Below, in pieces: positions 3,996-63,965 of a DNA stretch of 64,000 bases. The translations under genes and the position numbers were made by a program. Under the pieces are notes generated by a model. That model did not search any database, was not told where the DNA came from, and worked only from the letters and a program-made list of their open reading frames with translations. The stretch's first letter is position 1, and the number at the start of each line of letters is the position of its first letter. Origin of the DNA: Octopus bimaculoides (Eukaryota); NCBI RefSeq assembly GCF_001194135.2, contig NC_068982.1:65705891-65769890 (forward strand), written 5' to 3'.

Positions 3996-4075
3996 GTGTC
4001 AATCACTATATGTAACCTGTCTATCCACTAGTATGTATGTTTACATATATATATTTATATATCGTAGCGGATCAT

Positions 4076-6925: not shown

Positions 6926-9109
6926 TGTTACAAAAATGTTTTACTTGGAAAGAAAAAGTGGATTTTCATTTAGGCCTATTGATTTGAACCTGAATCTACA
7001 GAATTCCCTTTTAGCGTACCACAGCATTTTCTCGCGGAGAGACAAGAATTGACAGCTGAGACATTCAACACAAGCCAAATTATGTATTCTCCACTTGACT
7101 CTTTTAACCCCTCCAAACAAACAATAGCTGATAGGAAATACGGAAGATACCAACTGCAGTTCCCATTGTTTTCAGAGTGGCATGTCTCTCTTTCTTACCA
7201 TGTTATGATAATTGTAAATACAGACAGTCCACTAGCTAAAGTCAGTTAGTCAAAGGAGTTGGCGAAAGAGACGACCTCGAAATAGTTGGTAAGGTGAAGA
7301 TGACAAGAGGCAACTATGATATCTATAACTTTCACTGTCTCTATCACCCTTTAAAGGTTTATTACTCCAACTAATGACATAAACAGTAACCAACAACACA
7401 AGAAGAAAACGGTTAGAGCAACTTCCCTTTTGTTTTGATCGACTTTTGAGGATTTGTAATGAAACAAGGAAATCCACCTGTCTTTAAGAACTGATATATA
7501 TTCAACTATTTGTAACAGCTCTGTGCTTGAACTCTGATATTTTGTGACGGCTTGTGTTTTGGACTCAGATGATTATAACAGCTTTGAGCTGCCTTCGGTC
7601 TGTGTATTTTATGCCATTCATTTAATACACATCTAAAATCCTATGGGTTGTTGTTTTATTTGCTGTTGCCTTTGTCTAACCCATAACCAATCTTATACAC
7701 ACACACACACATATATATAAGCACTTCAATTAATCAATGTTCCTCATCATGTCACCCTCCCCTACACCATATCATCTGCTGCAGCCCTCCTCCCTCCATC
7801 ACTTTTCTTGCTTGCGACCTAGAAACCTCTCACCTGTTAACCATTCTTCACCCATTAATACTTTTCTCCACACCTTCATGTTACAGTAGTCATCGTTTTC
7901 CCTCCCCCAGACCGCCAAATTATTCCCCCTCATGCACTAAGCTTGTTTATCTCTACTCTGTTCCTTCAAGGCAGTGGTCTAATGACTAAAACAGGTAAAA
8001 GATAGAAGTTTAATGAAAAAAAAAATGAGCAAAAATGGAAGAAGAGGCATAAATTCCTTTTTTTCATTTTACAATGTTAAAATCTCTACAGTTGTCTAAA
8101 TTTGAACTGTTTACAACAACAACAAAAAAAAAAAAGAAACAAAAATGATGAAACAATTGATAAAATATTATTTATTATAACATGGAATGCTTTACACTTT
8201 TTTATATAAGTTTGAAATGAAATTTTATTACTATTATTGAAATTACAATAGTTAGGCAGTCTGTGGCTATCTGATAAATCAATTTGTTTTCGTTTTAATT
8301 TCTTGTTGAAATATAAATGGAATGAATTTTAAGGCAATGTAAAGACATATATAATGTGTTAAGGTAACATAAAGTGATATCTAATTTAACAAATGAAAAG
8401 CTGACTACAGATAGCTTCTAACCATCTAGAGAGGAAAGTTGAAAAACCTTTATATATTCCAGGTGCAAAGGCCTATCTTCAGAAAGATAGAGTCAGAGAA
8501 ATGTGTCAATGAAGACTCTGCTATTTGAATAGCTGAATGGGCTGTAACCTCGTTTCAGTCCAGTGATTGTGCTAACAGCAGCTGACACAAGTGTTGTTGA
8601 CAATGGAGGTAAAATATCATTGTAGTAGCTGGTGATGGCATTGGTGGTACATGTCCTTTTAGCAGTCATTGACAAGGTGGTGGCTGACAATAGCAACAAT
8701 CACATTGCAGCAATAAAAAGCGTTATATAATATATTTTAAGATGAAATAAACCGAGATATGAATTTAAAAGATTACATGGTATAAACTTGATTATAATAA
8801 TAAAACTTGATTATAATAAAACTGTTATATTTATTCCACCCAGTTCAGGATTTTTAAAAAATGTGCAATATAAAATATAATTATGGTTTTAAAAAGAGAA
8901 TATCACATGAGAACTCTAATGAATTTTGTTTATGATTTTCTCAATGCAAAAAAGCCGACTATTAATGTAGCAGCTACACCTGCAACTATAATCCATGGCA
9001 AGTTCTGAGTTGATTTTTGAACAATTGCAGTCTGCAAAATTTGAAAGAGAAATTAATTTTAATTATCATTATAAGCAAGAATATATAATAATGTTTGGAT
9101 AGTATAAAG

Positions 9110-17299: not shown

Positions 17300-20200
17300 T
17301 GAGAACTTTCCTGTATCCGTAAGATCAAAGTTGTGGCCAGAGCAGGTCTCATAGCTCTGTGTCTGGAGAGAAATGCGTTGATGCTGTACCTCAAGATGGA
17401 TGAAAGAGACCAACTGAATGTGGCCAAGATGGAGCAGCAGATAAAAGAAGCCTTTACAGAAGGATCATATGTTGCATCTGCCAAGCTGGGAACAGTCAGG
17501 CGGACAGGGGAACAGATAGACGTGTACACAGCAGAGGTTCGGAGACTGGCCATGCCATCTGGTTTTATCAGAGAGGGACTAGAATGGGTGGCATGATTGG
17601 CTTTCATAAATAGCTTCCCTAACGACATATCGGTGTGACTGCAAACAACTGGCAGGCAGTGAGAAAATGGTGATAAGTGAGCTCATTGCTCAAGCCCACA
17701 TGTCAACACAAAACACCAGGAGGAATGCAGTGGCAATGGCAGCTATGGAAGCCCACAATGTTATGCAATGATCAGTAAAGAATGAAGAGAGAAAAACTGC
17801 CATGGAGCAGCAGTGACTGTTTATGGGCTGGTGTTTCAAGTACCACAGACCACACAAGACAAAGGACTGTGTGGAGACGAAGCCTGCACGCATTTGCTAC
17901 TGGTGCAGGCAGACAGGGCATATTGCTTGAAAGTGCAACAAGGGAAAAGGCCATGGGGAAGTTGTTGCCTCTCAAACTTCCCTCATAGACAAGTAGAGGC
18001 TCTCATGCAGTTGCTGCCAGTAGTTGAAGTCCTGGTCGGAAGAAAGGTTTGCAGAGCCCTTGTAGATACAGTTAGTACAACGTCTATTGTGACCCCAAGG
18101 GTGACAAAAAAATGGCAAGTGATGAGTAGTGTTTGGGCTGTTGATAGCAGCAAAATTGGATGAAATGGTAGCAGTGAAGTGGAGATAGCGGTGCGGGGCA
18201 CAACACTGAGGCTGCAGGTGATTGTGATCGACCATGTGGTAGATGGAATGGATGAAGGTGTCAGTGTCAGTGGAGACATGGTTTCATTTGGTGGTACAGG
18301 GGCATCATGCACTCTAAGTCTGCAACATGAGATGGGGCACAGCTCCATGGGGGATTGTACTGCTTACACCATTGAAGATAAAAATTTTCAAGCAGTATTT
18401 GATGGTCAGCGGTGGACGGTAGAGTGTCGTGGGAAAGGGAAGCCCCCAACATTGAAGAACAAGCTAAGCTGTTATCAGTATACTTTGAAAGGAGGTGCCA
18501 GAAATGAGTTTGAAGGAGAGGTAGAGAGATGGACCAAAGAGGGTATCCTTATCCCTTGGAAGGAGGAAGTGAAGAGTGGAGTGCTTCCACTAATGGCAGT
18601 GGTGCAGTCAATGAAGGGCAAAACCAGGCCAGTACTGGACTTTTGAGAGATGAATGGCCATGTATTGTGCCCTACGGACAGCAATGTGGCTGATGTCTGT
18701 GGGGAAACATTGCAAGAATGGAGATGGATGATAAGGGTGGCAACAATTGTTGACTTGAAGTTGGCATATCTGCAGCTTCATGTGAGTGAGAAACTGTGGT
18801 GGTATCAGCTGGTGTGATATAAGGGCCAGACATACTGTTTGACTTAGGCTGGGTTTTGGGTTGAATTCCACGCCAAAGATCATGGCAAAAGGGCTCAAAT
18901 CTATCCTGGGAAAGGTGGACAAGGTAAAAAAGGCTACCAATTCCTATATAGATGACATCCTAGAAGACAAGACTGTAGCATCTACCGCAGAGGCCAATAA
19001 GTCACCTAAAGAAGTTCAGGCTGACTGCAAAACCACCAGAGCCAATGGTTGGAAGAGCTGCACTGGAGCTCAAGCTTCAAAGAGACAAAACAGTAGTGTT
19101 GATGTTTCAGAGGGGAAATGAGATTCTGGAACTAGGTAGCAGCATCAACGGACAAGAACTATTCTCAATGACAAGAACTATTCTCAATGTGATGGTAGCA
19201 ATGATGCAGAACCTAGAGAGGGTATGAGCAGAAGACCTAGTAAGAGGAAGCTGCTATGTGCCCAAATTGGAGAACAGGATGCTAGCAGTATAGTGATACA
19301 GTTTATCCTGGAAATTGGAGGTGTCAAACTGGAGGACACAGCCTGGCTCTGCAAAGCAGATGTTTACAATCACATCAATGTGGCTGAGTTGGATGCAGTG
19401 CTGAAGGGGGTGAATGTGACCCTGAGATGGAGGCTGTGCTCTATCAAAATCTGAACTGATTCAATCACAGTGCTTGGATGGGTAGTAAAGCGTTTGTTAG
19501 TAAAGTGCTACCTAAGGGTTCTGGGAGAACTAGCTGCCGAATTTGGTTTGAAGCTGAGTGTGATCTTTATGCCTCAGAAAGGAATAAGACAGACATTCTA
19601 ACCAGGCTGAAAAAGGCCTGGTTGGTGGTGCCGGAAGATTCGGAGTGGGGGATAGCTGCAGTGTGTCGGCTAGGTGACTCAGAACTAAGGAAACTACATG
19701 CCATGTATCATATAGGTGTGGATAGAACCCTGTGTCTTGTCAGGAGGGTTGACTCTGACATTACTAGGCAGAGCATTCAAAAGGTGGTCAGGAGTTGTGA
19801 TAGGTGTCAATCAATCGACTCTCTCTGGGTGTGAATGAACCACAAAACATCTCAGTAGAGTACAACTGGAGACAATTGGCAGTGGATGTGACACACTACC
19901 AGCAGGGGACATAGCTCTCGATGGTTGAATGTGGACTGGGTTGGATAGCCATATGGAGGGAAATGAAGATAGGCACTGCAGATGAGGTTGCACATAATCT
20001 GAATGAGATATTCCAGGAGTGGGGCTTGTGGACGAATTGCTGATGGACAATGGCACCGCATTTCATTCGGAGATGCTTGATAGGTGGAATGTGCATTGCT
20101 TCTTCAGAGCGGCGTACAGGCCAAGTGGAAGAGGGATTGTGGAAAAACACCATCACACGATCAAGGCCATGGCAGAGAGAGAACACATCTCACTACTGAA

Positions 20201-23747: not shown

Positions 23748-25114
23748 TGTATCGAGTAGGAATAGTCTAATGAGATCGCATATGCCTCTGCTAACATCAT
23801 ATGACCCGATGTTCACATCGAAAGTACCCTCTGTATTGGTAGTCTTGACCCACTTGCATTCTCACTGAAGAGTAAAGTCTTTCTAGCATGGAAGATTATG
23901 ACCTTATCTTGTGTACTAATTTCTATAAATTCGCTCGCGAAGGTGAGGGCTTTATCTGCGGTATCCGATCCTCATGGCTGGCCCGACCCAAAGAACACTA
24001 GAAATAGCAGCTGCTTCTCCCAACACCTAGACGATCGCTTGGCACATCCTCTCCTCACAACAACCCTGTTCAAAAAGGGCACAAAATCCCGATCGAGGCT
24101 CCCTCAGCCCTTCTTCCTCTTCCGGTCAGTTCACGGTTCCGGTCAGCAGTCAGCTCCCCAGTTGCTGACGTCATACCACATGCCACCCTGATCTTAAAGA
24201 TCACGTCCGCCCCTACTCCACTTCGAAGTCCGCCATCCAACCTGGCGGGCGCCTTACGCGTCGAGATCTTCTCAAGCCAGGTGCCTCGTCTCCCACTCCG
24301 CACTCTTCATCCGACGAAGTGGCTATCCTGCACAGGTCCAGCACGTGACGTGGCATTCCATCCACGGATACACTGTTTCTGGAATTGTGCAGAGTGCCTT
24401 TGGCGGCTTGACCCAAACTTTCTCCGCTCGGCCAATACGCCGCTCTGAATAATCGTCACACCTTCCACCGGTCGAGCATCTCCCCCAACGCTTCAGAACG
24501 AAACGCCGCCCCATTGTTCATTAGCAGTTCTTCCACGGGACCCCTCTCCAAGAATATCCCATTCAAAATCTGGGCGACCTCATCAGCAATGCCTGTCCTC
24601 AACTCCCTCCAAATGGCCAGCCGGCCCGGCCCACAGTCGACCATGGTGAGATACATTCCCTGACAGTAGTGCGTCACATCCACAGCTAGTCTCCTCCAGT
24701 TGCGCTCTACTGAGAGGTTCCCTTGCTCATGCCCACCTGGGGCGGGGTCAATGGACTGGCATCTATCACAGTTCCCAACCACTTTCTTCACGCTTCTACT
24801 AGTGACGTCAGCATCAATCATCTTCGCTAGATACAGGATCCTATCCACCCCCAAGTGGTGCATAGCATGTAGCTTCTTCAATTTGGAGTCACCCAGCCGA
24901 CACGCTGCTGCTATCCCTTTCCTTGCTTCCTCCGGTTCCTCCAGCCACGCCCTTTTCACCCTGGTCAGTGCGTCAACCCTGTTTCTCTCCGAAGGCACGA
25001 AAACCACATTCAGCTTCAGTCCGAACTCGGCAATCAGCTCTCCTAGAACTCCTAGGCGGAATTTCACCAACATCTCCGCGGCACCTTTTGTCCGGACTCT
25101 CTTCTCACTGGTAA
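23748..25114 (-). mobile_element. Younger Gypsy copy: RNaseH/integrase plus 3' LTR (24180-23748), inserted in an RTE fragment and cut by a gap
   Basis: 24456-25073 is open for 205 aa (HAMHHLG..CDRCQS..WRRLAVDV..ELLMNNGAAF). The LTR runs TGTGG...ATACA on the minus strand after a purine tract. The left flank is RTE sequence truncated at gaggcta. Confidence 0.85.
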
Positions 25115-25654
25115 NNNNNNNNNNNNNNNNNNNNNNNNNNNNNNNNNNNNNNNNNNNNNNNNNNNNNNNNNNNNNNNNNNNNNNNNNNNNNNNNNNNNNN
25201 NNNNNNNNNNNNNNNNNNNNNNNNNNNNNNNNNNNNNNNNNNNNNNNNNNNNNNNNNNNNNNNNNNNNNNNNNNNNNNNNNNNNNNNNNNNNNNNNNNNN
25301 NNNNNNNNNNNNNNNNNNNNNNNNNNNNNNNNNNNNNNNNNNNNNNNNNNNNNNNNNNNNNNNNNNNNNNNNNNNNNNNNNNNNNNNNNNNNNNNNNNNN
25401 NNNNNNNNNNNNNNNNNNNNNNNNNNNNNNNNNNNNNNNNNNNNNNNNNNNNNNNNNNNNNNNNNNNNNNNNNNNNNNNNNNNNNNNNNNNNNNNNNNNN
25501 NNNNNNNNNGTTCCCCTCGCAGACTTAAGGACACAGTAATTGTGTCAAGGCCGACAGGAAGCGGTCCAGCTTCCTAGGGCTAAACGGCAGTAGTGTATTC
25601 CCTTATTGGGATTGTCACATTAAGTTGACAATATACTACAACTATATATATACT

Positions 25655-26160: not shown

Positions 26161-26685
26161 TCTTGTCAAAATTTATAAAGTGCTTTTTTTTTTCTACAAT
26201 CTGNNNNNNNNNNNNNNNNNNNNNNNNNNNNNNNNNNNNNNNNNNNNNNNNNNNNNNNNNNNNNNNNNNNNNNNNNNNNNNNNNNNNNNNNNNNNNNNNN
26301 NNNNNNNNNNNNNNNNNNNNNNNNNNNNNNNNNNNNNNNNNNNNNNNNNNNNNNNNNNNNNNNNNNNNNNNNNNNNNNNNNNNNNNNNNNNNNNNNNNNN
26401 NNNNNNNNNNNNNNNNNNNNNNNNNNNNNNNNNNNNNNNNNNNNNNNNNNNNNNNNNNNNNNNNNNNNNNNNNNNNNNNNNNNNNNNNNNNNNNNNNNNN
26501 NNNNNNNNNNNNNNNNNNNNNNNNNNNNNNNNNNNNNNNNNNNNNNNNNNNNNNNNNNNNNNNNNNNNNNNNNNNNNNNNNNNNNNNNNNNNNNNNNNNN
26601 NNNNNNNNNNNNNNNNNNNNNNNNNNNNNNNNNNNNNNNNNNNNNNNNNNNNNNNNNNNNNNCGGAAGGATGAGGAGAGGTCCTT

Positions 26686-27560: not shown

Positions 27561-28755
27561 ACAAAGTCTTGGGTGGGGGGCACAAGTGTAGGTATAACTC
27601 AATTAGAATATTTTGAAAAAATAAGGAAACTGATAGTTAACCTTTATTTTGGACAGGGTAGAGATGGACTATATGTAATCTGAACCTCCCCCCCCCCCTT
27701 ATTTATTAATTTTTTTACGGAATCCCACGTTTTAGTCTATGGAGATTCCGATTCTGAAAAATAAAATTTTGAAAAATTTCAATTNNNNNNNNNNNNNNNN
27801 NNNNNNNNNNNNNNNNNNNNNNNNNNNNNNNNNNNNNNNNNNNNNNNNNNNNNNNNNNNNNNNNNNNNNNNNNNNNNNNNNNNNNNNNNNNNNNNNNNNN
27901 NNNNNNNNNNNNNNNNNNNNNNNNNNNNNNNNNNNNNNNNNNNNNNNNNNNNNNNNNNNNNNNNNNNNNNNNNNNNNNNNNNNNNNNNNNNNNNNNNNNN
28001 NNNNNNNNNNNNNNNNNNNNNNNNNNNNNNNNNNNNNNNNNNNNNNNNNNNNNNNNNNNNNNNNNNNNNNNNNNNNNNNNNNNNNNNNNNNNNNNNNNNN
28101 NNNNNNNNNNNNNNNNNNNNNNNNNNNNNNNNNNNNNNNNNNNNNNNNNNNNNNNNNNNNNNNNNNNNNNNNNNNNNNNNNNNNNNNNNNNNNNNNNNNN
28201 NNNNNNNNNNNNNNNNNNNNNNNNNNNNNNNNNNNNNNNNNNNNNNNNNNNNNNNNNNNNNNNNNNNNNNNNNNNNNNNNNNNNNNNNNNNNNNNNNNNN
28301 NNNNNNNNNNNNNNNNNNNNNNNNNNNNNNNNNNNNNNNNNNNNNNNNNNNNNNNNNNNNNNNNNNNNNNNNNNNNNNNNNNNNNNNNNNNNNNNNNNNN
28401 NNNNNNNNNNNNNNNNNNNNNNNNNNNNNNNNNNNNNNNNNNNNNNNNNNNNNNNNNNNNNNNNNNNNNNNNNNNNNNNNNNNNNNNNNNNNNNNNNNNN
28501 NNNNNNNNNNNNNNNNNNNNNNNNNNNNNNNNNNNNNNNNNNNNNNNNNNNNNNNNNNNNNNNNNNNNNNNNNNNNNNNNNNNNNNNNNNNNNNNNNNNN
28601 NNCTTGTCAGTGATTGGTTGAAATTATCGAAATAAGACAATTTTTTACATGAAATAAATTCGAATACAAAAATATTTTTCTGTTCTATAACACAAAATAG
28701 ATAAGTATACGAAGTTTGAAAGTCTTTCAGTACCAAAAACACTACGTAAAACATT

Positions 28756-32536: not shown

Positions 32537-33879
32537 ATGAAAACTACCCACCCTGCCATCTGTTTTAACTTTTTGTTGTTTTGTTTAATATATACATAGA
32601 TTATGCCTTCAAAAAAGAGAGCTTGCTGGGGAAAGAAAGCAACCGGTTTAAAAAGACAGCAACAGACTGCAGCAATTCACCACATTCCAGAAGCTACTTT
32701 GAACATAATGCAAAATGGTGCATCAACATCTACTGCTCAATTTGATAGAATTCTGGCAGAACTGTGTAGCAATAGATCGCCAGCAATTCTTTCATCAGAA
32801 ATTGCCGTCCTAGCTCCTGCGAAAAGGGATTACCCTGCTATGTATAATCAGGGCAGCACAAAAAGTTGTTTTGCACAAGCATTTGCATAGCCAATTAGAC
32901 GGATGAAATTTACGTACGCTTAATAATGTTACGCAAAACAGCCTTCAGACATTCCCTATTAATTGCATCGTCGTTTGAATTATGAACATATTTACATCAT
33001 AGGGGTTTTTACGTTGTAAGGCTTTCTTTTTTTAGTTGATTTTCACCTAGCAAGACTTATCGTAGATGGCGTAATAAGTCACACCCGGACAAAGTCGGGT
33101 TATACTGCTAGTAAACCAATAAATTAGAAGTTAACAGCTTTTAAATTTTGCAAATTTCTAGTAAGTTTAGCCGATCGTAAGCCAGNNNNNNNNNNNNNNN
33201 NNNNNNNNNNNNNNNNNNNNNNNNNNNNNNNNNNNNNNNNNNNNNNNNNNNNNNNNNNNNNNNNNNNNNNNNNNNNNNNNNNNNNNNNNNNNNNNNNNNN
33301 NNNNNNNNNNNNNNNNNNNNNNNNNNNNNNNNNNNNNNNNNNNNNNNNNNNNNNNNNNNNNNNNNNNNNNNNNNNNNNNNNNNNNNNNNNNNNNNNNNNN
33401 NNNNNNNNNNNNNNNNNNNNNNNNNNNNNNNNNNNNNNNNNNNNNNNNNNNNNNNNNNNNNNNNNNNNNNNNNNNNNNNNNNNNNNNNNNNNNNNNNNNN
33501 NNNNNNNNNNNNNNNNNNNNNNNNNNNNNNNNNNNNNNNNNNNNNNNNNNNNNNNNNNNNNNNNNNNNNNNNNNNNNNNNNNNNNNNNNNNNNNNNNTTT
33601 TTAAAATTTTATGGGAAAAAGTGACATATTTCCTGAGATTCAGCTTTGAAATGTGAAACTAACGGTTTAAGAAATACTCCCTAATTTAAATTTTATGAAT
33701 AGAATTAACCTAGTGTTTTCATAATCCAGCTATCTGGGTACTCGCGTATCCGCGCTAGCTAGTCGTGACTAGTCGATCCTACAACGACAAGCTAGAGCGG
33801 ATACGCAAAACATATATGAGGGTTTTTTTTAAAAACAAAGTAAATTTTTTTTTTTTGTTGAATCTTCCCCATCTTACTC

Positions 33880-34449: not shown

Positions 34450-34885
34450 TCTTCTTCTTGCCCTTAACCCCCCAACGCGGAGTATAGGCCACTTATAATT
34501 GAATTCCATGTCGCATAATTTCTCGCTTCTGTACTTTACCATGAATGTCCCCCTTTCTTCTAGTTCCTTTTGTGTTGATCTACGCCACGAGTTCATAGGC
34601 CTACCCCTCTTTCTATATCCATCCGGATTCCACTGTAAAGCACTTTTCGCTGCATTTTGGTGTGTCCTTTCTAATCGTGCTACCAATCCACTTCCACTTT
34701 TTCTTAAATATTTGCTCCCTAATCGAAACTTGATTCGTTCTTTGCCATAGCTCCATATTGCTTATGTGTTCGGGCCATCTGATTTTAAGTATACTACGCA
34801 AGCACCTGTTGATGAATGATTGTATTTGCTTATTTGACTTAACTGTTGTACTCCATGTCTCAGCCCCATACAATAACACCGCTTT
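34450..34885 (-). mobile_element. 5'-truncated RTE-clade LINE with (AAG)n tail
   Basis: LLYGAETW...INRCLRSILKIRWPEHISNMELWQRT...WIG...ALQWNPDGYRKRGRPMNSWRR. Confidence 0.85.
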
Positions 34886-35735: not shown

Positions 35736-35872
35736 ATGTCCAGATTTGTCGCAGTGGCCTTCCGCTCAGCATGTCGCCTTTTGAATACTTCTCGACCCCT
35801 GACCTCCAAACGTGACACACAGTACACGAGTGTAAGGAATTTCCTCGTAACACAATCAAAAACCAAGGACAA
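35736..35872 (+). CDS. FDX1: Mitochondrial ferredoxin (adrenodoxin) exon 1: mitochondrial presequence
   Basis: ATG 35736 MSRFVAVAFRSACRLLNTSRPLTSKRDTQYTSVRNFLVTQSKTKD, Arg/Ser-rich with almost no acidic residues. Ends AA|gtaagt (phase 2) and joins either exon 2 as K (KDK-ITIYF, cf. human FDX1 EDK-ITVHF). Confidence 0.85.
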
Positions 35873-40300: not shown

Positions 40301-42388
40301 CTGTTCTGGAACTGACTTATTTGGGTGACGTTTTTTGTGTTTGAGCCGCCCTGTTTATCTAGTTTCCGAGGAAGATGCTAGAGAAAGGTTGTCTGTCTAA
40401 TTTCAGCTGCTTAATTTACTGTGGCAAAGGAAAAAGGTAATAATTCCCACAGGCAACCTTCAACTTTTTCTATCCAAAGGGATTTTCTACCCAATATTTA
40501 CAAAGTATTATTCATAGCTCTATCTACTTTGAGCTCCACTGTTAGAAACAGATTATTAATGATTATATTGTTTCCCACCTTCTTCATTCATTAGGTACCA
40601 AAGTTTATACCTTCTAGGTAATATGCTTAGTTCCTGACTATCTTTCCCCACCCTCTCTCTTGCTCTCTCTCACCTAAGCTGTTTCCTTTATTCTAATATC
40701 TGTTGGTTAGAAAGAAACAAATAGATGGAAGGTGACAATTTGCAGGGATCAGCCAGAAATCTTAACTTTTTTTTTTTAAAAACACATTTACAAATAAATG
40801 CTTCTTATTTTACTTCAATCAATTTTTTCATTCTCCCTTTTTCTTTTGGGTGTCGGCTCTTTTGCTTTTCACATGAAACATGAAAACAACAGGTAAACTT
40901 TGGTAANNNNNNNNNNNNNNNNNNNNNNNNNNNNNNNNNNNNNNNNNNNNNNNNNNNNNNNNNNNNNNNNNNNNNNNNNNNNNNNNNNNNNNNNNNNNNN
41001 NNNNNNNNNNNNNNNNNNNNNNNNNNNNNNNNNNNNNNNNNNNNNNNNNNNNNNNNNNNNNNNNNNNNNNNNNNNNNNNNNNNNNNNNNNNNNNNNNNNN
41101 NNNNNNNNNNNNNNNNNNNNNNNNNNNNNNNNNNNNNNNNNNNNNNNNNNNNNNNNNNNNNNNNNNNNNNNNNNNNNNNNNNNNNNNNNNNNNNNNNNNN
41201 NNNNNNNNNNNNNNNNNNNNNNNNNNNNNNNNNNNNNTTGTGCGGGTGGCACATAAGACACCATTTCGAGCGTGGCCGTTTTCGTGCAGGTGACATGTAA
41301 AAGCACCCACTACACTCTGAGTGGTTGGTGTTAGGAAGGGCATCCAGCTGTAGAAACTCTGCCAAATTAGATTGGAGCCTGGTGTTGCCATCCGGTTTCA
41401 CCAGTCCTCAGTCAAATCGTCCAACCCATGCTAGCATGGAAGGCGGACGTTAAACGATGATGATGATATATATATATTTTAGTAACAGTTTGATTCAACT
41501 CCATATGACTTAAATTTTCATGGGCATGTAGACTACATCCCATTTCATCATATTCGACCCTTCTAATATCCCATGTGAGGGACACGTCCTACACACCCTT
41601 GAAATTTTGTTACACAGAGCTTAGTCAGACTGCTATTAAAAATATATATAACTGCTGCCAAAAGTGTTGAGTGCCACTTTTGTTGATCCACTCATTCATG
41701 TACTAAATATATAATATAGATAAACTGGCACAGCCAAGCACTTGGAAAACTTTCACAATTCCTGGGAAAACTTTGGGGACTAAGTATACTCTTTGAGAGC
41801 TGAGATGTTTGGATTCAATAAAACGAAATATAGTGATTGGCTTCATGATGATAATGTTGTGCTCAGCCATCTGCTAGAAATGAAAGACTTAAGCTTGCAA
41901 AGTCAATTGCAAAATCTGTATGGTTGGGAAGTTTATTTTATGTTCAATCCTATTGCATGTCACCTTGGGCAAACGTTTTTTACTATGGTACCACCAAAGT
42001 GTTGTGAGTGGATTTTGTAGATGGAAACAAAAATAAGTCCATGTGTGTGTGTGTGCATGTCCTTTTCTTGACATCATATGATTGTTATAAATGAGTCATA
42101 TTATACAAGTAGTGTCATTAATTTCTAATATGCTGCAAGAATTTGTCAAGCTATGCTCAGAAACCCGTGAAGATTGGCAGCAGGAAGGGCATGTAGCTGC
42201 AGATCTGCCTTAATAAACTGTGTCCATCTAATTCATGCAACTATTGAAAAGTGGACCTGAAAATGATGAGGAGGTAACTGTGCAATGAGAGTCGAGGAAA
42301 ATTCAAAACAAGTGGTAGTCAGATATCTCCCAGAAATTCAAATTCTGTACAATAGAAGACCTTAAATATGTTTCTTTGTGTGTGTGTG

Positions 42389-42424
<36 letters not shown>

Positions 42425-43447
42425 TATCATCATTTTACATCTGCTATCCTTAGGTTGGACAGTTTGAGAGGGTTGGAGGACCACATCTTGCTCCATTGTG
42501 TCAGTTTTTGTATGGTTTCTACAACTGGATGCTCTTCTTAATGTTAACTCCTTTATAGAGTTTACTGGGTGCAGTTTTGTGATATTAGCACTAACAAGAT
42601 CACCATGCAATCAGAAAGTTAAAGAGTATGCAAGGTGTTGAGAGGTTAAAGTATGATAGTCAGGAACAGGTTTGTTGTTGTAGAGGAGATACCCTACATT
42701 ATCTATGGGTGGGTGAGAGTATTTGGGGTGGAACATGGTGATGGTGAGTTGTCAGTGTATCCTCAGAAAATATGAAAGCAGAAACCATGGGGATAGAAGT
42801 TCAAGAAAAGTGTGTGTGTGTGTATACTTGTTGAACTTAAACTGGATTGTAGAAAGAAGAGTTAAAGTGAAATATCCAATTTATTTATGTATTATATTTA
42901 TTCATTCAGTTATAATTAAATGCCTGCAAATCCAATTATGTAATATGCATTATATAACAGGCATGGCTATATCATTTTTCTCATCCATGTCTATACATTG
43001 TTTAATTGTCACATGCATGTTGTTGAAACAATTTTAAACTATGGAAGAAAGTAATGCCAGCTACTCCATTCTTTACTTATTTTACACACACACATTAATA
43101 TATGCAAATAAAGTGTGTGTGGTGGAAGTCGAGTTAACTTGTGCCTGAGTACAACTACTTCTTGATACATGATAAATTTCTTGGATGTAACCATGGAAAT
43201 CAGCAAAGAGAGGACAATTACTAACCGTTGCCCAGTTCTGAAATTTAGCAAACTTTGTTTAAACTGCCTTTTCTATGTTTCTTAGAGTATTGACTATTAA
43301 GGCTGAAACTACTGCCATCTATTGAATGTATGTAGTATTATACACTTGACTACGTTACTGCAATTATTCACAGCTATTTAAAACCATATTTCATTGTACT
43401 ATTAGTGTTTAATATTTATTTTTATTGCTGATGCTGTTAACTCTTAG

Positions 43448-43554
43448 GATTACAATATATTTCATTGATCGAGATGGAGACCGTATTGCTGTGACTGCCA
43501 GTATTGATGAAACACTTCTTGATGTGGCTCTGAGGAATGATATTGACCTTGAAG
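43448..43554 (+). CDS. FDX1: Ferredoxin exon 2A (mutually exclusive; FDX2/Yah1-like DLEG loop)
   Basis: Acceptor gctgttaactcttag|G; 107 nt ITIYFIDRDGDRIAVTASIDETLLDVALRNDIDLE; donor G|gtattt; phase 2 in, phase 1 out; no stops. Gives a 155-aa protein. Confidence 0.85.
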
Positions 43555-43617
43555 GTATTTATCTATCGATTCAATTTGCAGCAAAAGCTATTTTTCTTCC
43601 CCCTTTTTGTGTTTCAG

Positions 43618-43730
43618 GGTAACCATATATTTTGTGACCAGTGATGGCAACAAAATTGCAACAGAGGCCAAAGTAAATAGCACTTTGTTGGACTCTATTA
43701 TTGACAACGACCTTGATTTTGATGGCTTCG
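43618..43730 (+). CDS. FDX1: Ferredoxin exon 2B (mutually exclusive; FDX1-type DFDGFG loop)
   Basis: Acceptor ttcttccccctttttgtgtttcag|G; 113 nt VTIYFVTSDGNKIATEAKVNSTLLDSIIDNDLDFDGF; donor G|gttagt; same phases as 2A; no stops. Gives a 157-aa protein. Confidence 0.9.
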
Positions 43731-45969
43731 GTTAGTGGTTTTCTATTTCTCTGCAGGAATATTTCATCTTCTCTCTAAATTCTCTCTTCTGTCTCAGTTT
43801 AATTTACCAAAATGTATTGCTTTATAGACATTTATTCTTTGTAACATAGTGGGATTTGAAAACTGCCATATTCTCTTATGGAGCTGTATTATTGAGTTTA
43901 TTCTTCTTTTATACGAACAATATGGCCAGATGGTTAAGAAATTTGCTTCACAACCATAATATCCCAAGTTCAGTCTCACTGCATAGTATCTTGGGAAAAT
44001 GTTGTTTTCTGTAACTTTCAAGTGATCCATGAGTGAAAATGAATAAGCAAAAACTGTATAGAAACTTAACCAGTGGATTGTACCTGTAATTTAAGAAAGC
44101 TTTATCTCACTCTGTCACCATGATTAAATCTGAAAATTATATATAGGGTACACGTGACTGTGGAATACTCAGCCATTTGCACATTAATTCAGGAGCAGGT
44201 AATTCAGTGCTCAAACAACTGAATCCTCACTGTCAAATAATGGAGTTCTACCTTCACTATTTCTCTTTGCTTACTTGTGTTGTGTTCAAGTAGGAATAAG
44301 TAGAATTCAGTCTTGTCTAGGACACAGTGCACTGCCAATGGTAAGATATAAATACTTAGTTCTTTAACTGGGAGGTGAATAACTTATTTAATTGGTTATT
44401 ACAACATCACTAAGGAATAATAATATGGGGTTATTCTGGTAAGTGTTTTCAGTGTTTAAATATTGTATAAAAATTCTCCATAAACCTCTTGTAAAAACTC
44501 TACATAAGTTTTAGATGATTACCATATTTGATGGCATGAAAGACGCATGAACATTAGATATACCCCAATTTCTGCAGGAAAAAAGTTTTCATGCATTAAC
44601 TCTTTAGCATTCAAGTCACTCTGTCAAATGTAATGCTCATTCATCCATAATGTTTGAATTAATTATCCATTATCTTGTAGCTTTGAGATTTCAATAATGT
44701 GATTGTTTATTTTTCAAATAATATTGTAGTGTAGGTGTGTGAGTGAAGGTATATGGCTTAGTGATTAAGGTATTCAGCTCATGATCATAAAGTTGTGAGT
44801 TCGATGACTGGTAGTACACTGTGTCCTTGAGCAAGATACTTTATTTCATGTTGCTTCAGTCCACTAAGCTGGAAAAAAATTGTAGTACCTATATTTCAAA
44901 AGGTCTGCCTTGTCACATCCTGTCATGCTGAATCTCCCTCAGAATTACATTAATGGTATGTGTGTCTGTGGAGTGCTCAGCCACTTGCACATTAATTTCA
45001 TGATCAAGTTGTTCCGCTGATCGGATCCCTTGTTGTCGTAACCAATGGAGTGCCAGTTAGTTTGTAGGTATGTATGAGATCAGATCTATCCAGTTTTAAC
45101 ATAGAACAAATAGGATACTTGAGCTGGATATGACCAATTTAAATGCTGAAGGGTTAAAGCATGTATTATAGGCCCAGCTTCATATATAGGACCTAGAATG
45201 ATGTTTTGAGACAATGTTTTTGAAAAAAAGTGTTTTATATGCTATCAAATATGGTAGTTGGCATAAGATTTAGATTAATATACTATTTGATGGCAGTGTT
45301 TCACATCTATAAACGATATCATACAAGTAAACAGATTTCAAAAAGCATCATATTCTTTTTCACTTGTGATAATTTAATGTGCAAAGTGGGTTTATATTTC
45401 ACTGCATATATTCTAATATTTTTTAATAAACCAGAATTTTTTATTAGTGCTGTGATATACAGGACTGATAAATATCATGGTGTGGATAATGTTCAGCACA
45501 TTTTGACAAATAGCTCTTTGTAGTTCATTCTAAGCTTGCATGTTCATTCCTGCATGACAGTTTATCTCTTAATGTGTCAACTGTTTTTCTCCAAGGAAAT
45601 TTAGTTTGAATTGGCAGAGCTTAAAAAAAGAAAACAATAAGTGCGGGAAAAGCCTGTTAAAATTTATCCAATGGAAAATTATATGCTTAACAAACCTTGA
45701 AATAAATACTCCAAACTCGATTCTAGTCACTACCTCCTGCAAACATGAAAATGTTCACCAATGAGGGAACCTGTAAGTGCTTTCCTAACATGTTAGAGAT
45801 AACTACTAAAGCTCCATCAAATCACTCCCAACCTTCTGAAGAAAAAATAGCACTTGCATACGATAATATAGTTTGTGATGCAATGTCTGATAATGAGTTT
45901 ATTGTAGCTGCTCAACCAGAGCTGGCCAGGGGTTAAGAACAACACTAAAACCATAGGTACTGAGACATA

Positions 45970-46110
45970 AACTTACATCTGTTTCCAACTTACATCTGTT
46001 TCCAACTTACATCTGTTTCCAACTTGCATCTGTTTCCAACTTACATCTGTTTCCAACTTACATCTGTTTCCAACTAACATCTGTTTCCAACTCACATCTG
46101 TTTCCAACTA
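45970..46110. repeat. 17-bp minisatellite, 8 copies (AACTTACATCTGTTTCC)
   Basis: Units start at 45970, 45987, 46004, 46021, 46038, 46055, 46072 and 46089; variants CTTGC, CTAAC and CTCAC. Confidence 0.95.
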
Positions 46111-50029: not shown

Positions 50030-51420
50030 AGCCTGTTTCTGTTCTAATAGCCCTGTCAACAACATTGTTCCACCACCACGTTATTTTGGGTTGAGGGGGA
50101 CTTTGCACCATCCACAGATCTGGTCAGTGGCCCTCAGCAGGTTGTCCCGTAGAAACCTCCAGTTGTCTTCTACATTGTGTGAAGCTATATCCCCTTCGAG
50201 TAATAAGTCTCTAAATCTCTGTCCATTCGCAGGATCTTTGAGCTTCCAGACCCTTCTCCTCCATGCTGGTTGTCTTCTGGGCAACAACTTAGCTCTGATC
50301 CTGAAGTCACTAACTACTAGTTTGTGTTGCGGGGTACATTCTTCGCCTGGGAAGGTTTTGGCAGCCATCTTCCCCTTTTCCTGGTGAGGATGTAGTCAAT
50401 TTGGCTAGTGTGTCTGCCAGAACGGTAGGTAACTAGGTGACTGGCAGGTTTCCTGAACTTAGTATTGCAAACCATAAGTTCATTTGCATCACAGAACTCC
50501 AGCAGCCTGGCTCCCTCCTCATTGCGGGAACCAAAATCATAGCCTCCATGTACGCTATGGAAGCCCCCTGAATGTTGTCGAACATGTCCATTGAAGTCAC
50601 CAGCCACAAAGAGAAGGTCCCTGTCATTCGTCGACAAGGTCGTCTGCAAGAGGGTGTCATAAAATCAGTCTCTCTGTCCATTGGGTAGCACAGGCTGAGG
50701 GGCATAGGCCGAGATAATGGTTGCTAACCCATGGTGAAGGACTAATCTAATCTTAAGTATTCTATCGCATACTCTGGCTACCTCAATTACCTGATCCACC
50801 CATTTCTCCGCAAGAAGTATACCCACGCCCCCAACCTTGTCTGTGTTCCCTGCCCAGAAAATCTTGTACCTGTGTTCTTTGCCTGTGAGGAACCTAGTGG
50901 AACCTCCTTTCCACCTTACTTCTTGGAGGCAGCAGATATTGACACATCTCCTTTCAAGCGTCTCAACAATCTCACCAGACCTACCTTTCAGTGTGCTGAC
51001 GTTGAGAGTGCCAACCCTGAGGGTGTGGGAGGTATGGGCCCGTGAGACCCTGGGGCGGGGAACAGCAGCATCATGTACCTGAAAAGAAAGCTCACATTTT
51101 GCAGAATTCATAAACAATCAGTAGCCCTCATGTCAACCTCCATCCACTACACTATCATATTTTGCACTATATGATCACTACCTACATAGGAGGAGATAAA
51201 CCCTAAGTAGGGGTGGCGTGAAGCCTTTAGAAGTGTTCATGGGAGACGGCCAGGAACTTCCGTTACTGATGGAGAGGATAGGAACTTCCAGTACTGGTGG
51301 AGGGCGTGGGAGGGCGTATGCACCACTGGCATAGTGCTGCAAAGGTATTAAGGTCAAGTGGGGGAATTGGGGTGCATGCGCTAGTTTATAGTCCTGCCGA
51401 AGCAAGAGGTAATCGAAAGA
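50030..51420 (-). mobile_element. RTE LINE 5' half (APE endonuclease), frameshifted
   Basis: LRVGTLNVSTLKGRSGEIVETLERR..CCLQEVRWKG..GGVGILL..ISAYAPQ; AGDFNGHV; SQIDYILTRK. Confidence 0.9.
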
Positions 51421-52360: not shown

Positions 52361-52487
52361 GAGCTTGTGAAGGTACTATGGCCTGTTCCACTTGTCACGT
52401 AATATTACCCAAACACATATACAATGCTGAATTACCATCGGATGAAGAACAAGATTTATTAGATATGGCCTATGGATTAACAGATAC
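52361..52487 (+). CDS. FDX1: Ferredoxin exon 3 ([2Fe-2S] C-x5-C-x2-C)
   Basis: Acceptor cttttgctgtctttgttag|GA; 127 nt [41 protein letters not shown]; donor AC|gtaagt. Confidence 0.97.
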
Positions 52488-52720: not shown

Positions 52721-52817
52721 GTCTCGCCTTGGTTGTCAGGTTTATGTGACAGAGGATATGGACGGCGTTGAGATAAAAATTCCTACAGAAACAAATGATA
52801 TACGAGGATTTTCTTAG
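52721..52817 (+). CDS. FDX1: Ferredoxin exon 4 (fourth Cys, stop)
   Basis: Acceptor tttttgtctcattttgtag|G; SRLGCQVYVTEDMDGVEIKIPTETNDIRGFS*. The short C-terminus is FDX1-like (no FDX2 ..PKPH tail). Confidence 0.97.
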
Positions 52818-52864: not shown

Positions 52865-52870
52865 AATAAA
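52865..52870 (+). terminator. Probable polyadenylation signal of the ferredoxin gene
   Basis: AATAAA 48 nt after the stop codon. Confidence 0.55.
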
Positions 52871-60004: not shown

Positions 60005-60459
60005 NNNNNNNNNNNNNNNNNNNNNNNNNNNNNNNNNNNNNNNNNNNNNNNNNNNNNNNNNNNNNNNNNNNNNNNNNNNNNNNNNNNNNNNNNNNNNNNN
60101 NNNNNNNNNNNNNNNNNNNNNNNNNNNNNNNNNNNNNNNNNNNNNNNNNNNNNNNNNNNNNNNNNNNNNNNNNNNNNNNNNNNNNNNNNNNNNNNNNNNN
60201 NNNNNNNNNNNNNNNNNNNNNNNNNNNNNNNNNNNNNNNNNNNNNNNNNNNNNNNNNNNNNNNNNNNNNNNNNNNNNNNNNNNNNNNNNNNNNNNNNNNN
60301 NNNNNNNNNNNNNNNNNNNNNNNNNNNNNNNNNNNNNNNNNNNNNNNNNNNNNNNNNNNNNNNNNNNNNNNNNNNNNNNNNNNNNNNNNNNNNNNNNNNN
60401 NNNNNNNNNNNNNNNNNNNNNNNNNNNNNNNNNNNNNNNNNNNNNNNNNNNNNNNNNNN

Positions 60460-60629: not shown

Positions 60630-60785
60630 GACAAATAAGACAGACAATCATACAGACACAGACAGATAGGCAGGCAGGCAGGCAGACAGACAGACAAACA
60701 GACAGACAGACGGACGGACAGACGGACAGACAGGCAGACAGACACAGACGGACGGACAGACAGACGGACAGACAGACAGACAGCA
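60630..60785. repeat. (GACA/GGCA/GACG)n tetranucleotide repeat
   Basis: Directly visible. Confidence 0.9.
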
Positions 60786-63283: not shown

Positions 63284-63965
63284 GTTAAGTTTATTCAATC
63301 TATGTACACATATGTTGTAGATGAGTCGATCATCTTTTTCCTTTGTTATATGATGTGTATATAAACTTGTCAACATGTTTATTAAGATAGTAAGAAGTGC
63401 AATGCTAATGGATTTTGCTTCCTTTTTTTTTTATCTGGATCACATAATTGTTGATTTATTCTTTATAGTTTGTATAGCATACAAGAGAGAAGCCATAATA
63501 AAAATTATTGNNNNNNNNNNNNNNNNNNNNNNNNNNNNNNNNNNNNNNNNNNNNNNNNNNNNNNNNNNNNNNNNNNNNNNNNNNNNNNNNNNNNNNNNNN
63601 NNNNNNNNNNNNNNNNNNNNNNNNNNNNNNNNNNNNNNNNNNNNNNNNNNNNNNNNNNNNNNNNNNNNNNNNNNNNNNNNNNNNNNNNNNNNNNNNNNNN
63701 NNNNNNNNNNNNNNNNNNNNNNNNNNNNNNNNNNNNNNNNNNNNNNNNNNNNNNNNNNNNNNNNNNNNNNNNNNNNNNNNNNNNNNNNNNNNNNNNNNNN
63801 NNNNNNNNNNNNNNNNNNNNNNNNNNNNNNNNNNNNNNNNNNNNNNNNNNNNNNNNNNNNNNNNNNNNNNNNNNNNNNNNNNNNNNNNNNNNNNNNNNNN
63901 NNNNNNNNNNNNNNNNNNNNNNNNNNNNNNNNNNNNNNNNNNNNNNNNNNNNNNNNNNNNNNNNN

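What the first reader, a model, noticed from the sequence alone, without database searches (positions are those of the whole stretch)
43448..43730. Mitochondrial ferredoxin gene with tandem, frame-enforced mutually exclusive exons 2A/2B
Seen in sequence: two adjacent exons encode the same ferredoxin segment. They are 107 and 113 nt, both phase 2 in and phase 1 out, both with canonical AG/GT and no stops, and are separated by only 63 nt. Their peptides match at 16/35 positions, so the duplication is old yet both copies remain open. Either exon alone gives a complete 155- or 157-aa presequence + [2Fe-2S] protein. Splicing 2A to 2B creates GAA GGG TAA, an immediate stop; skipping both shifts the frame. 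Inference: exclusivity is enforced by frame/NMD and possibly sterically by the very short intron. I know of no described mutually exclusive splicing in adrenodoxin genes.
Basis: partly seen in the sequence, partly recalled or inferred. Interest (0 to 1): 0.92.

Follow-up and report, generated by a model that had tools for sequence, protein, structure and literature searches.

The report
Octopus ferredoxin gene, two alternative exons
The octopus adrenodoxin-type mitochondrial ferredoxin gene has two tandem copies of its second coding exon, used one at a time; the pair is real and shared by molluscs and a ribbon worm, and both products are already in RefSeq, though I found no paper describing it.

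Summary
Exon 2A (43448-43554, 107 nt) and exon 2B (43618-43730, 113 nt) both have AG/GT boundaries. They lie 63 nt apart and match at 16/35 residues. Joining both gives GAA GGG TAA; skipping both gives a TGA after three codons.

With either exon the product exactly equals an Octopus bimaculoides RefSeq protein: 2A gives XP_014769561.1 (isoform X2) and 2B gives XP_014769560.1 (X1). The isoform pair is therefore already annotated.

The same A-then-B pair, again 107 and 113 nt, is present in Argonauta, a cuttlefish and a clam. RefSeq lists matching X1/X2 pairs for many bivalves and gastropods and for the nemertean Tubulanus. Loci from a chiton, Lineus, Lingula and Ptychodera have no A exon.

Both exons are under purifying selection. 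Cuttlefish RNA-seq contigs splice exon 1 to 2A to exon 3 to exon 4.

Exon 2A is the ancestral type (cnidarian-, Yah1- and FDX2-like, ending "LEG"). Exon 2B carries the adrenodoxin "DGFG" two-residue insertion next to the first cluster cysteine.

Frame-based exclusivity is shown. Steric exclusion is plausible only in Octopus, because the clam spacer is 2.9 kb. I found no paper describing this. It is a new, well-conserved member of a known kind, of moderate interest.

The parts
35736..35872 (+). Coding part of exon 1: ATG plus the presequence (45 codons + 2 nt), donor CAA|gtaagt
   Evidence: The translation equals the N-terminus of XP_014769560.1 and XP_014769561.1.
40907..41237 (.). Assembly gap (run of N) inside intron 1
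43448..43554 (+). Exon 2A, 107 nt. Ancestral 'A-type' copy, ending ...DIDLE|G with no Gly-Phe insertion.
   Evidence: Gives RefSeq isoform X2. A-profile score 74.8 bits. dN/dS 0.07 against Argonauta.
43555..43617 (+). 63-nt intron between 2A and 2B. It has a long pyrimidine tract and no good branch-point consensus. Any branch point would lie 45 nt or less from the 2A donor.
   Evidence: The spacer is 81 nt in Argonauta, 102 nt in Acanthosepion and 2940 nt in Ruditapes.
43618..43730 (+). Exon 2B, 113 nt. Adrenodoxin 'B-type' copy, ending ...DLDFDGF|G.
   Evidence: Gives RefSeq isoform X1. dN/dS 0.38 against Argonauta.
52361..52487 (+). Exon 3: the cluster-binding loop ([11 protein letters not shown]) and the acidic interaction helix ([12 protein letters not shown]). 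Shared by both isoforms.
52721..52817 (+). Coding part of exon 4: SRLGCQ (fourth Cys ligand) through to the TAG stop. AATAAA lies at 52865-52870.

Best explanation
This is the Octopus bimaculoides FDX1 (adrenodoxin-type mitochondrial [2Fe-2S] ferredoxin) gene. Its second coding exon exists as an old tandem duplicate, 2A then 2B, and each mRNA includes one of the two.

SHOWN:
- Both copies are intact, with conserved length (107 and 113 nt), phase, order and splice sites in cephalopods and a clam.
- Both are under purifying selection.
- Each single-exon product is an annotated RefSeq isoform.
- Transcripts containing 2A alone exist in a cuttlefish.
- Including both exons, or neither, puts a stop codon within one to three codons in Octopus.

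INFERRED:
- The double-inclusion and double-skip mRNAs are removed by nonsense-mediated decay, so only the two single-exon proteins accumulate.
- In Octopus, the 63-nt spacer may additionally make 2A-to-2B splicing sterically impossible.

The swapped segment encodes strands 1 and 2, helix 1 and the loop that leads into the first cysteine ligand of the cluster. 2A is the ancestral type, found in cnidarian FDX1-like proteins, yeast Yah1 and FDX2, with '(D/E)LEG-AC'. 2B is the bilaterian adrenodoxin type, with 'DxDGFG-AC', two residues longer. The cluster ligands, the acidic reductase-binding helix and the C-terminus are shared by both isoforms.

The most likely function (inference, about 40% confidence) is to make two electron carriers from one gene. 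Both would be reduced by the same reductase but would differ in redox tuning or in acceptor preference, through the surface next to the cluster.
For: - Exact identity of the two conceptual products to XP_014769561.1 (X2) and XP_014769560.1 (X1).
- Tandem A and B exons of 107 and 113 nt with AG/GT boundaries in Argonauta hians, Acanthosepion pharaonis and Ruditapes philippinarum. The donors are conserved: AAG|GTAYTT for 2A and TYG|GTTAGT for 2B.
- pN is well below pS in all orthologous comparisons. For Octopus against Argonauta, dN/dS is 0.07 (2A) and 0.38 (2B). Orthologues are much closer to each other than the paralogues are.
- Ten of 22 Logan RNA-seq contigs from a cuttlefish were retrieved, each from a different run. 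All ten carry the same uninterrupted ORF, and the three aligned to the genomic locus map as exon 1, 2A, 3 and 4, skipping 2B.
- RefSeq X1/X2 pairs that differ only in this segment: Ruditapes, Argopecten, Mizuhopecten, Saccostrea, Crassostrea angulata and the nemertean Tubulanus had both members read. C. virginica, Mytilus trossulus, Physella and Biomphalaria are also listed as X1/X2 pairs, but only their A-type member was read. Gene models that wrongly fuse both exons in Mytilus, Plakobranchus, Batillaria and Acanthosepion show that A precedes B there too.
- Premature stops after 2A+2B in all four species.
- Exchanging 2B for 2A moves similarity towards FDX2 (68 to 93 bits) and bacterial ISC ferredoxin (53 to 70 bits), and away from adrenodoxin (133 to 120 bits).
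- Mollusc 2A is 56% identical to cnidarian exon 2 but only 41% identical to mollusc 2B. A mollusc-specific 2A+2B clade was never recovered (0/500 bootstraps).
- Both isoform models keep the same strand-strand-helix layout in the swapped segment and match adrenodoxin and FDX2 structures.
Against: - No octopus RNA reads could be examined here. Expression of both isoforms in Octopus rests on the RefSeq models alone. From my own knowledge, Gnomon adds alternative variants only when transcript alignments support them; I did not verify this here.
- For the cuttlefish, the first 2B-isoform search returned no 2B-containing product.
- Nonsense-mediated decay of aberrant products was not tested.
- The published determinants of FDX1 versus FDX2 target specificity are Glu133 and the C-terminus (as summarised in PMC12855868 and PMC11618653). 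These lie in the shared exons, so a change of partner driven by exon 2 is unproven.
- The A-isoform structure model is of only moderate confidence (mean pLDDT 64.6).
Confidence: 0.82

Rival explanations
1. One of the two exons is a decaying relic (pseudo-exon), and the corresponding RefSeq isoform is splicing noise picked up by automatic annotation.
For: No octopus reads were inspected. Between O. bimaculoides and O. sinensis, the only two amino-acid differences in the whole protein fall in 2A. The first 2B-isoform search found no cuttlefish 2B transcript.
Against: Both exons keep an open frame, exact length, phase and splice sites from cephalopods to a clam. dN/dS is 0.07 for 2A and 0.38 for 2B. 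2A-only transcripts were assembled in the 10 cuttlefish runs retrieved, of 22 contigs on record. B-type transcripts occur in other molluscs' Logan assemblies (P0130, P0172, P0244, P0250 and P0253). Both members of the A/B isoform pair were read for five bivalves and a nemertean, and four more mollusc pairs are listed.
Confidence: 0.06
2. Exclusivity in Octopus is primarily steric, as for alpha-tropomyosin exons 2 and 3. On this view the 63-nt intron is too short for a branch point to sit far enough from the 2A donor, and the frame/NMD effect is secondary.
For: The spacer is only 63 nt. About 27 nt of it are pyrimidine tract, and it has no consensus branch point. Any branch point would lie 45 nt or less from the donor.
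Against: The spacer is 81 and 102 nt in the other two cephalopods and 2940 nt in Ruditapes, which has the same isoform pair. Steric block therefore cannot be the conserved mechanism. The minimum workable intron length for octopus spliceosomes is not known to me.
Confidence: 0.3
3. The choice between 2A and 2B is set by competing intronic RNA base-pairing (docking site and selector sequences), as in insect Dscam1 or 14-3-3zeta.
For: Weak inverted repeats exist. One example is 43213-43232 (which contains TACTAAC), complementary to the 2B donor region 43724-43743 at 75% over 20 nt.
Against: The region does not fold better than shuffled sequence (z = -0.46). Intron sequence outside the splice sites is not conserved among the three cephalopods. 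The ACTAAC element is absent upstream of 2A in Argonauta and Acanthosepion. Only about 400 nt around the exons were tested, out of 7.5-kb and 8.6-kb flanking introns.
Confidence: 0.07

Closest known systems
Tandem-exon-duplication mutually exclusive exons in general, especially coq-2 exons 6a/6e of nematodes, annelids and molluscs (Tan et al. 2020, eLife, PMC7434440)
   Same: Both involve two adjacent homologous exons in a nuclear gene for a mitochondrial protein, spliced one at a time. One copy resembles the pan-eukaryotic sequence and the other is lineage-restricted. Both remodel part of the protein core or active surface, and both occur in molluscs.
   Different: The coq-2 exons are of equal length and have a demonstrated metabolic role (the switch between ubiquinone and rhodoquinone). 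Here the lengths differ by 6 nt, no physiological role is known, and the lineage distribution differs: conchiferan molluscs plus one nemertean.
Alpha-tropomyosin exons 2/3 (steric-hindrance mutually exclusive splicing; from my own knowledge, Smith and Nadal-Ginard 1989)
   Same: In both cases the distance between the upstream exon's donor and any branch point for the downstream exon is very short.
   Different: In tropomyosin, steric hindrance is the demonstrated cause. Here it is untested and is not conserved, since the clam spacer is 2.9 kb. Frame incompatibility gives exclusivity at the protein level regardless.
Vertebrate FDX1 (adrenodoxin) and FDX2, which are separate genes
   Same: Isoform B has the adrenodoxin 'DGFG' loop. 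Isoform A has the FDX2/Yah1-like 'LEG' loop and scores 25 bits higher against FDX2 than isoform B does.
   Different: Both octopus isoforms keep FDX1-type exons 3 and 4 and lack the conserved FDX2 C-terminal motif (...RNFYVDGHVPKPH, as seen in P0021 and P0113). Isoform A is therefore not an FDX2. Whether Octopus also has a separate FDX2 gene was not tested.

Membership tests
Mutually exclusive exon pair derived from tandem exon duplication | Adjacent exons that are homologous to each other | tested here: met
   16/35 identical residues. Both exons hit FDX1 residues 66-104. The A-type profile hits both.
Mutually exclusive exon pair derived from tandem exon duplication | Same entry and exit phase, with canonical splice sites on both exons | tested here: met
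   True in four species.
Mutually exclusive exon pair derived from tandem exon duplication | Mature mRNAs contain exactly one of the two exons | tested here: inconclusive
   RefSeq X1 and X2 each contain one exon. The cuttlefish RNA-seq contigs contain 2A only. No octopus reads were available, and the 2A+2B product could not be searched for.
Mutually exclusive exon pair derived from tandem exon duplication | Both copies maintained by selection in related species | tested here: met
   dN/dS 0.07-0.38. The pair is present in three mollusc classes and in Tubulanus.
Frame/NMD-enforced exclusivity | Double inclusion and double skipping both create premature stop codons | tested here: met
   (Octopus, both cases). 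(2A+2B in four species). Actual degradation by NMD is not testable with these tools.
Steric-hindrance exclusivity | Donor-to-branch-point distance below the spliceosome's minimum | tested here: inconclusive
   The spacer is 63 nt in Octopus, with no mapped branch point, and 2940 nt in Ruditapes.
U2/U12 spliceosome incompatibility | One exon flanked by U12-type splice sites (donor /RTATCCTT) | tested here: not met
   The donors are GTATTTAT and GTTAGTGG, and the acceptors are AG with pyrimidine tracts.
Docking-site/selector RNA pairing | Conserved complementary intronic elements | tested here: not met
   This was a limited test covering only about 400 nt around the exons.
Adrenodoxin / FDX1-type mitochondrial [2Fe-2S] ferredoxin | Fer2 domain with the Cys-X5-Cys-X2-Cys...Cys ligand pattern | tested here: met
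   PF00111 in both isoforms. [11 protein letters not shown]...RLGCQ read directly from the sequence.
Adrenodoxin / FDX1-type mitochondrial [2Fe-2S] ferredoxin | Closest solved relatives are adrenodoxins, and the acidic helix D-E-E-x-D-x-L-D is present | tested here: met
   DEEQDLLD aligns with Adx DEENDMLD.
Adrenodoxin / FDX1-type mitochondrial [2Fe-2S] ferredoxin | Cleavable mitochondrial presequence | not tested
   The N-terminal 45 residues are basic and hydroxylated, contain only two acidic residues (Asp27, Asp45) and are modelled as disordered. No targeting predictor was run.
FDX2 (type II ferredoxin), considered for isoform A | Conserved C-terminal motif ...RNFYVDGHVPKPH | tested here: not met
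   The C-terminus is ...PTETNDIRGFS, compared with P0021, P0026 and P0113.

The most novel reading that the evidence does not exclude
The A/B exon pair may be a surviving intermediate in the origin of adrenodoxin. On this reading, the bilaterian 'DGFG' form arose as a tandem duplicate of an ancestral 'LEG' exon. Both were kept as alternative exons in the protostome or bilaterian stem, and most lineages later lost A, while conchiferan molluscs and some nemerteans still use both for different electron acceptors. The presence or absence of the Gly-Phe dipeptide next to the first cluster cysteine would be the functionally selected switch. This would explain why Daphnia magna toggles exactly those two residues by a different splicing route (X1 and X2 differ only by 'GF' at the exon 2/3 junction).
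Probability: 0.25. Interest if true: 0.7.

Novelty: new member of a known kind. Interest (0 to 1): 0.5.

Why it matters
Animals are normally described as having two mitochondrial ferredoxin genes with separate jobs. FDX1 serves P450s, lipoyl synthase and haem a. FDX2 serves Fe-S cluster assembly.

Here a single FDX1 gene has made two proteins since at least the common ancestor of molluscs and nemerteans. (Placing that ancestor in the Cambrian or earlier is from my own knowledge.) The two proteins differ in the segment that distinguishes adrenodoxins from older ferredoxins, which includes the two-residue insertion beside the cluster.

This gives a natural, testable pair for asking what that segment and insertion do for redox potential and partner choice. 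It also bears on how adrenodoxin-type ferredoxins arose.

On the practical side, it flags gene models in Acanthosepion, Mytilus, Plakobranchus and Batillaria that wrongly fuse both exons into one protein.

Tried and rejected
- Docking/selector RNA structure. No fold better than shuffled sequence, only weak inverted repeats and no conserved intron blocks among three cephalopods.
- Third exon copy. None found in the window.
- A exon in other phyla. Profile and tblastn searches of complete, gap-free loci from Lingula, Ptychodera, the chiton Liolophura and Lineus found only the B exon.
- Recent mollusc-specific duplication. Rejected: a 2A+2B clade appeared in 0/500 bootstraps, and 2A is closer to cnidarian exon 2. 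The tree on 35 columns is weak otherwise; the split of all A-type from all B-type has 48% support.
- Isoform A as a disguised FDX2. Rejected: exons 3 and 4 and the C-terminus are FDX1-type.
- Literature. Four searches for a described ferredoxin or adrenodoxin mutually exclusive exon found nothing relevant. Schulz et al. 2023 and Sheftel et al. 2010 are not held, so the role of the Gly-Phe insertion could not be looked up. The FDX1 deep-mutational-scan paper does not mention these residues.
- Other scans. Rfam and tRNA scans of the window found nothing. RSPH3, the neighbour of FDX1 in Lineus and amphioxus, was not found in the window.
- Limits reached. As a result the Daphnia and Tubulanus loci, and an octopus FDX2 gene, could not be examined.

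Full report
WHAT IS IN THE WINDOW

Reading 43300-43900 shows two exons exactly as described.
- Exon 2A is 43448-43554 (107 nt), bounded by cttag|GAT and GAAG|gtattt.
- Exon 2B is 43618-43730 (113 nt), bounded by tttcag|GGT and TTCG|gttagt.
- They are separated by 63 nt.

tblastn with human FDX1 and FDX2 (query sequences recalled from memory) finds both exons, exon 3 and exon 4, and no further copy in the 64 kb window. The full gene model is:

| Part | Coordinates | Note |
|---|---|---|
| Exon 1 (coding) | 35736-35872 | starts at the ATG |
| Exon 2A | 43448-43554 | 107 nt |
| Exon 2B | 43618-43730 | 113 nt |
| Exon 3 | 52361-52487 | donor AC|gtaagt |
| Exon 4 (coding) | 52721-52817 | TAG stop; AATAAA at 52865-52870 |

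Translations:
- Exon 1+2A+3+4 gives 155 aa.
- Exon 1+2B+3+4 gives 157 aa.
- 2A+2B gives ...DLEG then a stop (GAA GGG TAA).
- Skipping both gives ...KDKSL then a stop.

The two peptides share 16 of 35 positions.

IDENTITY AND PRIOR ANNOTATION

An exact-sequence look-up shows that the 155-aa product is XP_014769561.1, '2Fe-2S ferredoxin isoform X2 [Octopus bimaculoides]'. The 157-aa product is XP_014769560.1, 'adrenodoxin isoform X1 [O. bimaculoides]'. The window is therefore O. bimaculoides, and both isoforms are already in RefSeq.
- O. sinensis also has both. Its X2 is P0001. Its X1 is most likely XP_029657279.1, a second accession attached to the identical X1 sequence; that this accession is O. 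sinensis is my inference.
- The O. vulgaris model uses 2A.

Both isoforms carry Pfam Fer2. Both match solved adrenodoxins best. AlphaFold models of both keep the same strand-strand-helix layout in the swapped segment and superpose on adrenodoxin and FDX2 structures. Isoform B reaches a TM-score of 0.91 against 1AYF. The isoform A model is weaker, with TM-scores of 0.75-0.78.

CONSERVATION

Genomic loci fetched for relatives show the same arrangement.

| Species | Locus | Exon 2A | Exon 2B | Spacer |
|---|---|---|---|---|
| Argonauta hians | L001 | 17485-17591 | 17673-17785 | 81 nt |
| Acanthosepion pharaonis | L002 | 34525-34631 | 34734-34846 | 102 nt |
| Ruditapes philippinarum (clam) | L003 | 4004-4110 | 7051-7163 | 2940 nt |

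In all four species:
- The exons are 107 and 113 nt, and A is upstream of B.
- Boundaries are AG/GT, with conserved and rather weak donors: AAG|GTAYTT for 2A and TYG|GTTAGT for 2B.
- Joining 2A to 2B runs into a stop codon.

Nei-Gojobori estimates show pN well below pS in every orthologous pair. For Octopus against Argonauta, dN/dS is 0.074 for 2A and 0.384 for 2B. Orthologues (dN 0.05-0.41) are closer to each other than the within-species paralogues are (dN 0.46-0.78). The duplication therefore predates the cephalopod-bivalve split, and there is no sign of recent gene conversion.

Three homologue searches, together with sequence reading, extend this picture.
- RefSeq lists X1/X2 pairs that differ only in this segment. 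Both members were read for Ruditapes, Argopecten irradians, Mizuhopecten yessoensis, Saccostrea cucullata, Crassostrea angulata and the nemertean Tubulanus polymorphus (X1 is A-type, X2 is B-type).
- For C. virginica, Mytilus trossulus, Physella acuta and Biomphalaria glabrata, the listing names both isoforms, but only the A-type sequence was read.
- A-type isoforms alone were seen for Babylonia, other Mytilus species and Pinctada.
- Gene models in Acanthosepion, Mytilus edulis, Plakobranchus and Batillaria wrongly fuse A and B into one protein. This independently shows that both exons are present, in A-then-B order.

By contrast, complete, gap-free loci from Lingula, Ptychodera, the chiton Liolophura and the nemertean Lineus contain only the B exon. 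This holds by tblastn and by an A-type profile search.

TRANSCRIPT EVIDENCE

P0005 is a cuttlefish protein with the exon 1-2A-3-4 structure. It is encoded on 22 Logan RNA-seq contigs.
- The ten contigs retrieved come from ten different SRA runs and hold an uninterrupted 498-nt ORF with identical coding sequence.
- The three aligned to the Acanthosepion locus each split into exactly four blocks: exon 1, 2A, exon 3 and exon 4. They skip 2B.

The first 2B-isoform search returned no cephalopod 2B transcript. B-type transcripts from other molluscs do occur (P0130, P0172, P0244, P0250, P0253). No octopus reads could be examined. For Octopus, use of both exons rests on the RefSeq models.

WHAT THE TWO EXONS ARE

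Aligning exon-2 peptides from 37 proteins shows two clear types.
- A-type: F-x-DRDGD ... LLDVA ... (D/E)LE-G-AC. It is shared by mollusc 2A, Tubulanus X1 and cnidarian FDX1-like proteins. In the ending, it is also shared by FDX2 and fungal or plant mitochondrial ferredoxins.
- B-type... LLDV(V/I) ... D(I/L)DG(F/Y)-G-AC, two residues longer. Every other bilaterian FDX1 I inspected has it: vertebrates, insects, a tick, an urchin, a hemichordate, amphioxus, a brachiopod, annelids and a chiton.

Mollusc 2A is on average 56% identical to cnidarian exon 2 and 41% identical to mollusc 2B. Mollusc 2B is 52% identical to other bilaterian B exons. A mollusc-specific 2A+2B clade was never recovered (0/500 bootstraps). 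The split of all A-type from all B-type had 48% support with the indel columns removed.

Replacing 2B with 2A shifts similarity scores:

| Compared with | Isoform B (bits) | Isoform A (bits) |
|---|---|---|
| Human FDX2 | 68 | 93 |
| E. coli ISC ferredoxin | 53 | 70 |
| TIGR02007 (fdx_isc) | 69 | 81 |
| Adrenodoxin | 133 | 120 |

Isoform A is nevertheless not an FDX2. Exons 3 and 4 are FDX1-type, and the conserved FDX2 C-terminal motif is missing.

MECHANISM

Shown: frame incompatibility. Both exon lengths leave remainder 2 on division by 3, so including two exons or none shifts the frame. In Octopus this gives stops within one to three codons.

Inferred: nonsense-mediated decay removes those products.

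A steric contribution in Octopus is plausible, but it is not the conserved mechanism.
- The Octopus spacer is 63 nt. About 27 nt of it are pyrimidine tract, and it has no consensus branch point.
- Any branch point would lie 45 nt or less from the 2A donor.
- The clam spacer is 2.9 kb, so steric block cannot be general.

U12-type splice sites are absent. There is no sign of conserved competing RNA structure near the exons.

FUNCTION (INFERENCE)

From my knowledge of the bovine adrenodoxin structures, the swapped segment corresponds to residues about 6-44 of the mature protein. This covers strands A and B, helix C, and the loop carrying Asp39 and Asp41 that runs into Cys46.

The cluster ligands, the acidic helix used for reductase and P450 docking, and the C-terminus are common to both isoforms. 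The published FDX1/FDX2 specificity determinants, Glu133 and the C-terminus, lie in these shared exons (as summarised in PMC12855868 and PMC11618653).

I therefore expect both isoforms to be reduced by the same reductase. I expect them to differ in cluster environment or potential, or in a secondary contact surface, and hence in acceptor preference. This is untested.

COMPARISON AND NOVELTY

The closest described case is the coq-2 6a/6e mutually exclusive pair of nematodes, annelids and molluscs (PMC7434440). It too is a mitochondrial-pathway gene with one pan-eukaryotic-like exon and one lineage-restricted exon.

I found no paper describing alternative exons in a ferredoxin or adrenodoxin gene. 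The isoforms are, however, present in RefSeq for Octopus and for many other species.

I rate this a new, undescribed member of a well-known kind, not a new kind. Its interest is moderate. It comes from three things: the age of the pair, the fact that it swaps ancestral-type for adrenodoxin-type sequence beside the cluster, and the parallel toggling of just the Gly-Phe dipeptide in Daphnia magna.

Noticed in passing
P0311 vs P0251 (Daphnia magna XP_032794362.2 / XP_032794363.2); no locus fetched: Daphnia magna isoforms X1 and X2 are identical except for the dipeptide Gly-Phe at ...DVDLE[GF]GACEG. This is exactly the exon 2/3 junction and exactly the insertion that separates B-type from A-type exons. 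The cause is probably two donors 6 nt apart. The Daphnia exon otherwise looks A-like (FLDAAINNDVDLEG, compared with scallop 2A FLTAAINNDVELEG).
   Followed up: partly
P0241 / P0131 (Tubulanus polymorphus X1/X2): This nemertean has the same A-type/B-type swap as molluscs: 38 versus 37 residues, with the rest of the protein identical. The nemertean Lineus (L007) has only the B exon.
   Followed up: partly
L008 (Branchiostoma lanceolatum) about 3091-3203 and about 3801-3913, plus a fragment at 2769-2840: Amphioxus has an independent tandem duplication of the same exon. Both copies are B-type (DIDGFG), and there is a truncated third copy. Different amphioxus gene models use different copies (P0213 versus P0257), and P0123 fuses both.
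   Followed up: partly
P0004 (Acanthosepion), P0135 (Mytilus edulis), P0187 (Plakobranchus), P0190 (Batillaria): These deposited gene models join parts of both alternative exons into one over-long protein (181-203 aa). These are annotation errors caused by the tandem exons.
   Followed up: yes
P0122 (Octopus vulgaris CAI9717705.1, 261 aa): The O. vulgaris model carries a 106-residue N-terminal extension upstream of the conserved MSRFVAV start. This is probably a mis-called start.
   Followed up: no
window 918-1325 (-): An ORF with a signal peptide and the N-terminal part of alpha-L-fucosidase (Pfam PF01120, E = 1.8e-40). It is likely the first coding exon of a fucosidase gene.
   Followed up: partly
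window 25115-25509, 26204-26662, 27785-28602, 33186-33597, 40907-41237, 60005-60459, 63511-63965: Seven assembly gaps (runs of N). They explain the apparent low-GC windows at 26-30 kb. One lies in intron 1 of the ferredoxin gene.
   Followed up: yes
window 24456-25073 (-), 18179-18646 (+), 50665-51117 (-): By eye these ORFs look like retroelement fragments: an integrase-like ...CDRCQ... motif, and an endonuclease-like ...CCLQEVRWKG... motif inside the intron between 2B and exon 3. None reached E <= 0.01 against Pfam.
   Followed up: partly
window 45970-46109 and 60638-60783: A 17-nt tandem repeat of 8.2 copies (AACTTACATCTGTTTCC) lies in the intron downstream of 2B, and there is an (AGAC)n microsatellite.
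   Followed up: no
L007 375-4807 (-) and L008 1-1306 (-): A radial-spoke-3 (PF06098) gene lies head-to-head upstream of FDX1 in both Lineus and amphioxus, which suggests old microsynteny. No trace of it was found in the octopus window by tblastx.
   Followed up: partly
L009-L018 (cuttlefish RNA-seq contigs), 5' about 800-970 nt: The contigs carry a long leader upstream of the ATG. It is colinear with genomic sequence directly upstream of exon 1 in Acanthosepion (about 80% identity). This is either a long 5' UTR or an upstream-initiated transcript.
   Followed up: no
window 43213-43232 vs 43724-43743: An intron-1 element containing TACTAAC is 75% complementary over 20 nt to the exon 2B donor region. 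It is not conserved in Argonauta or Acanthosepion, so it is probably chance.
   Followed up: yes
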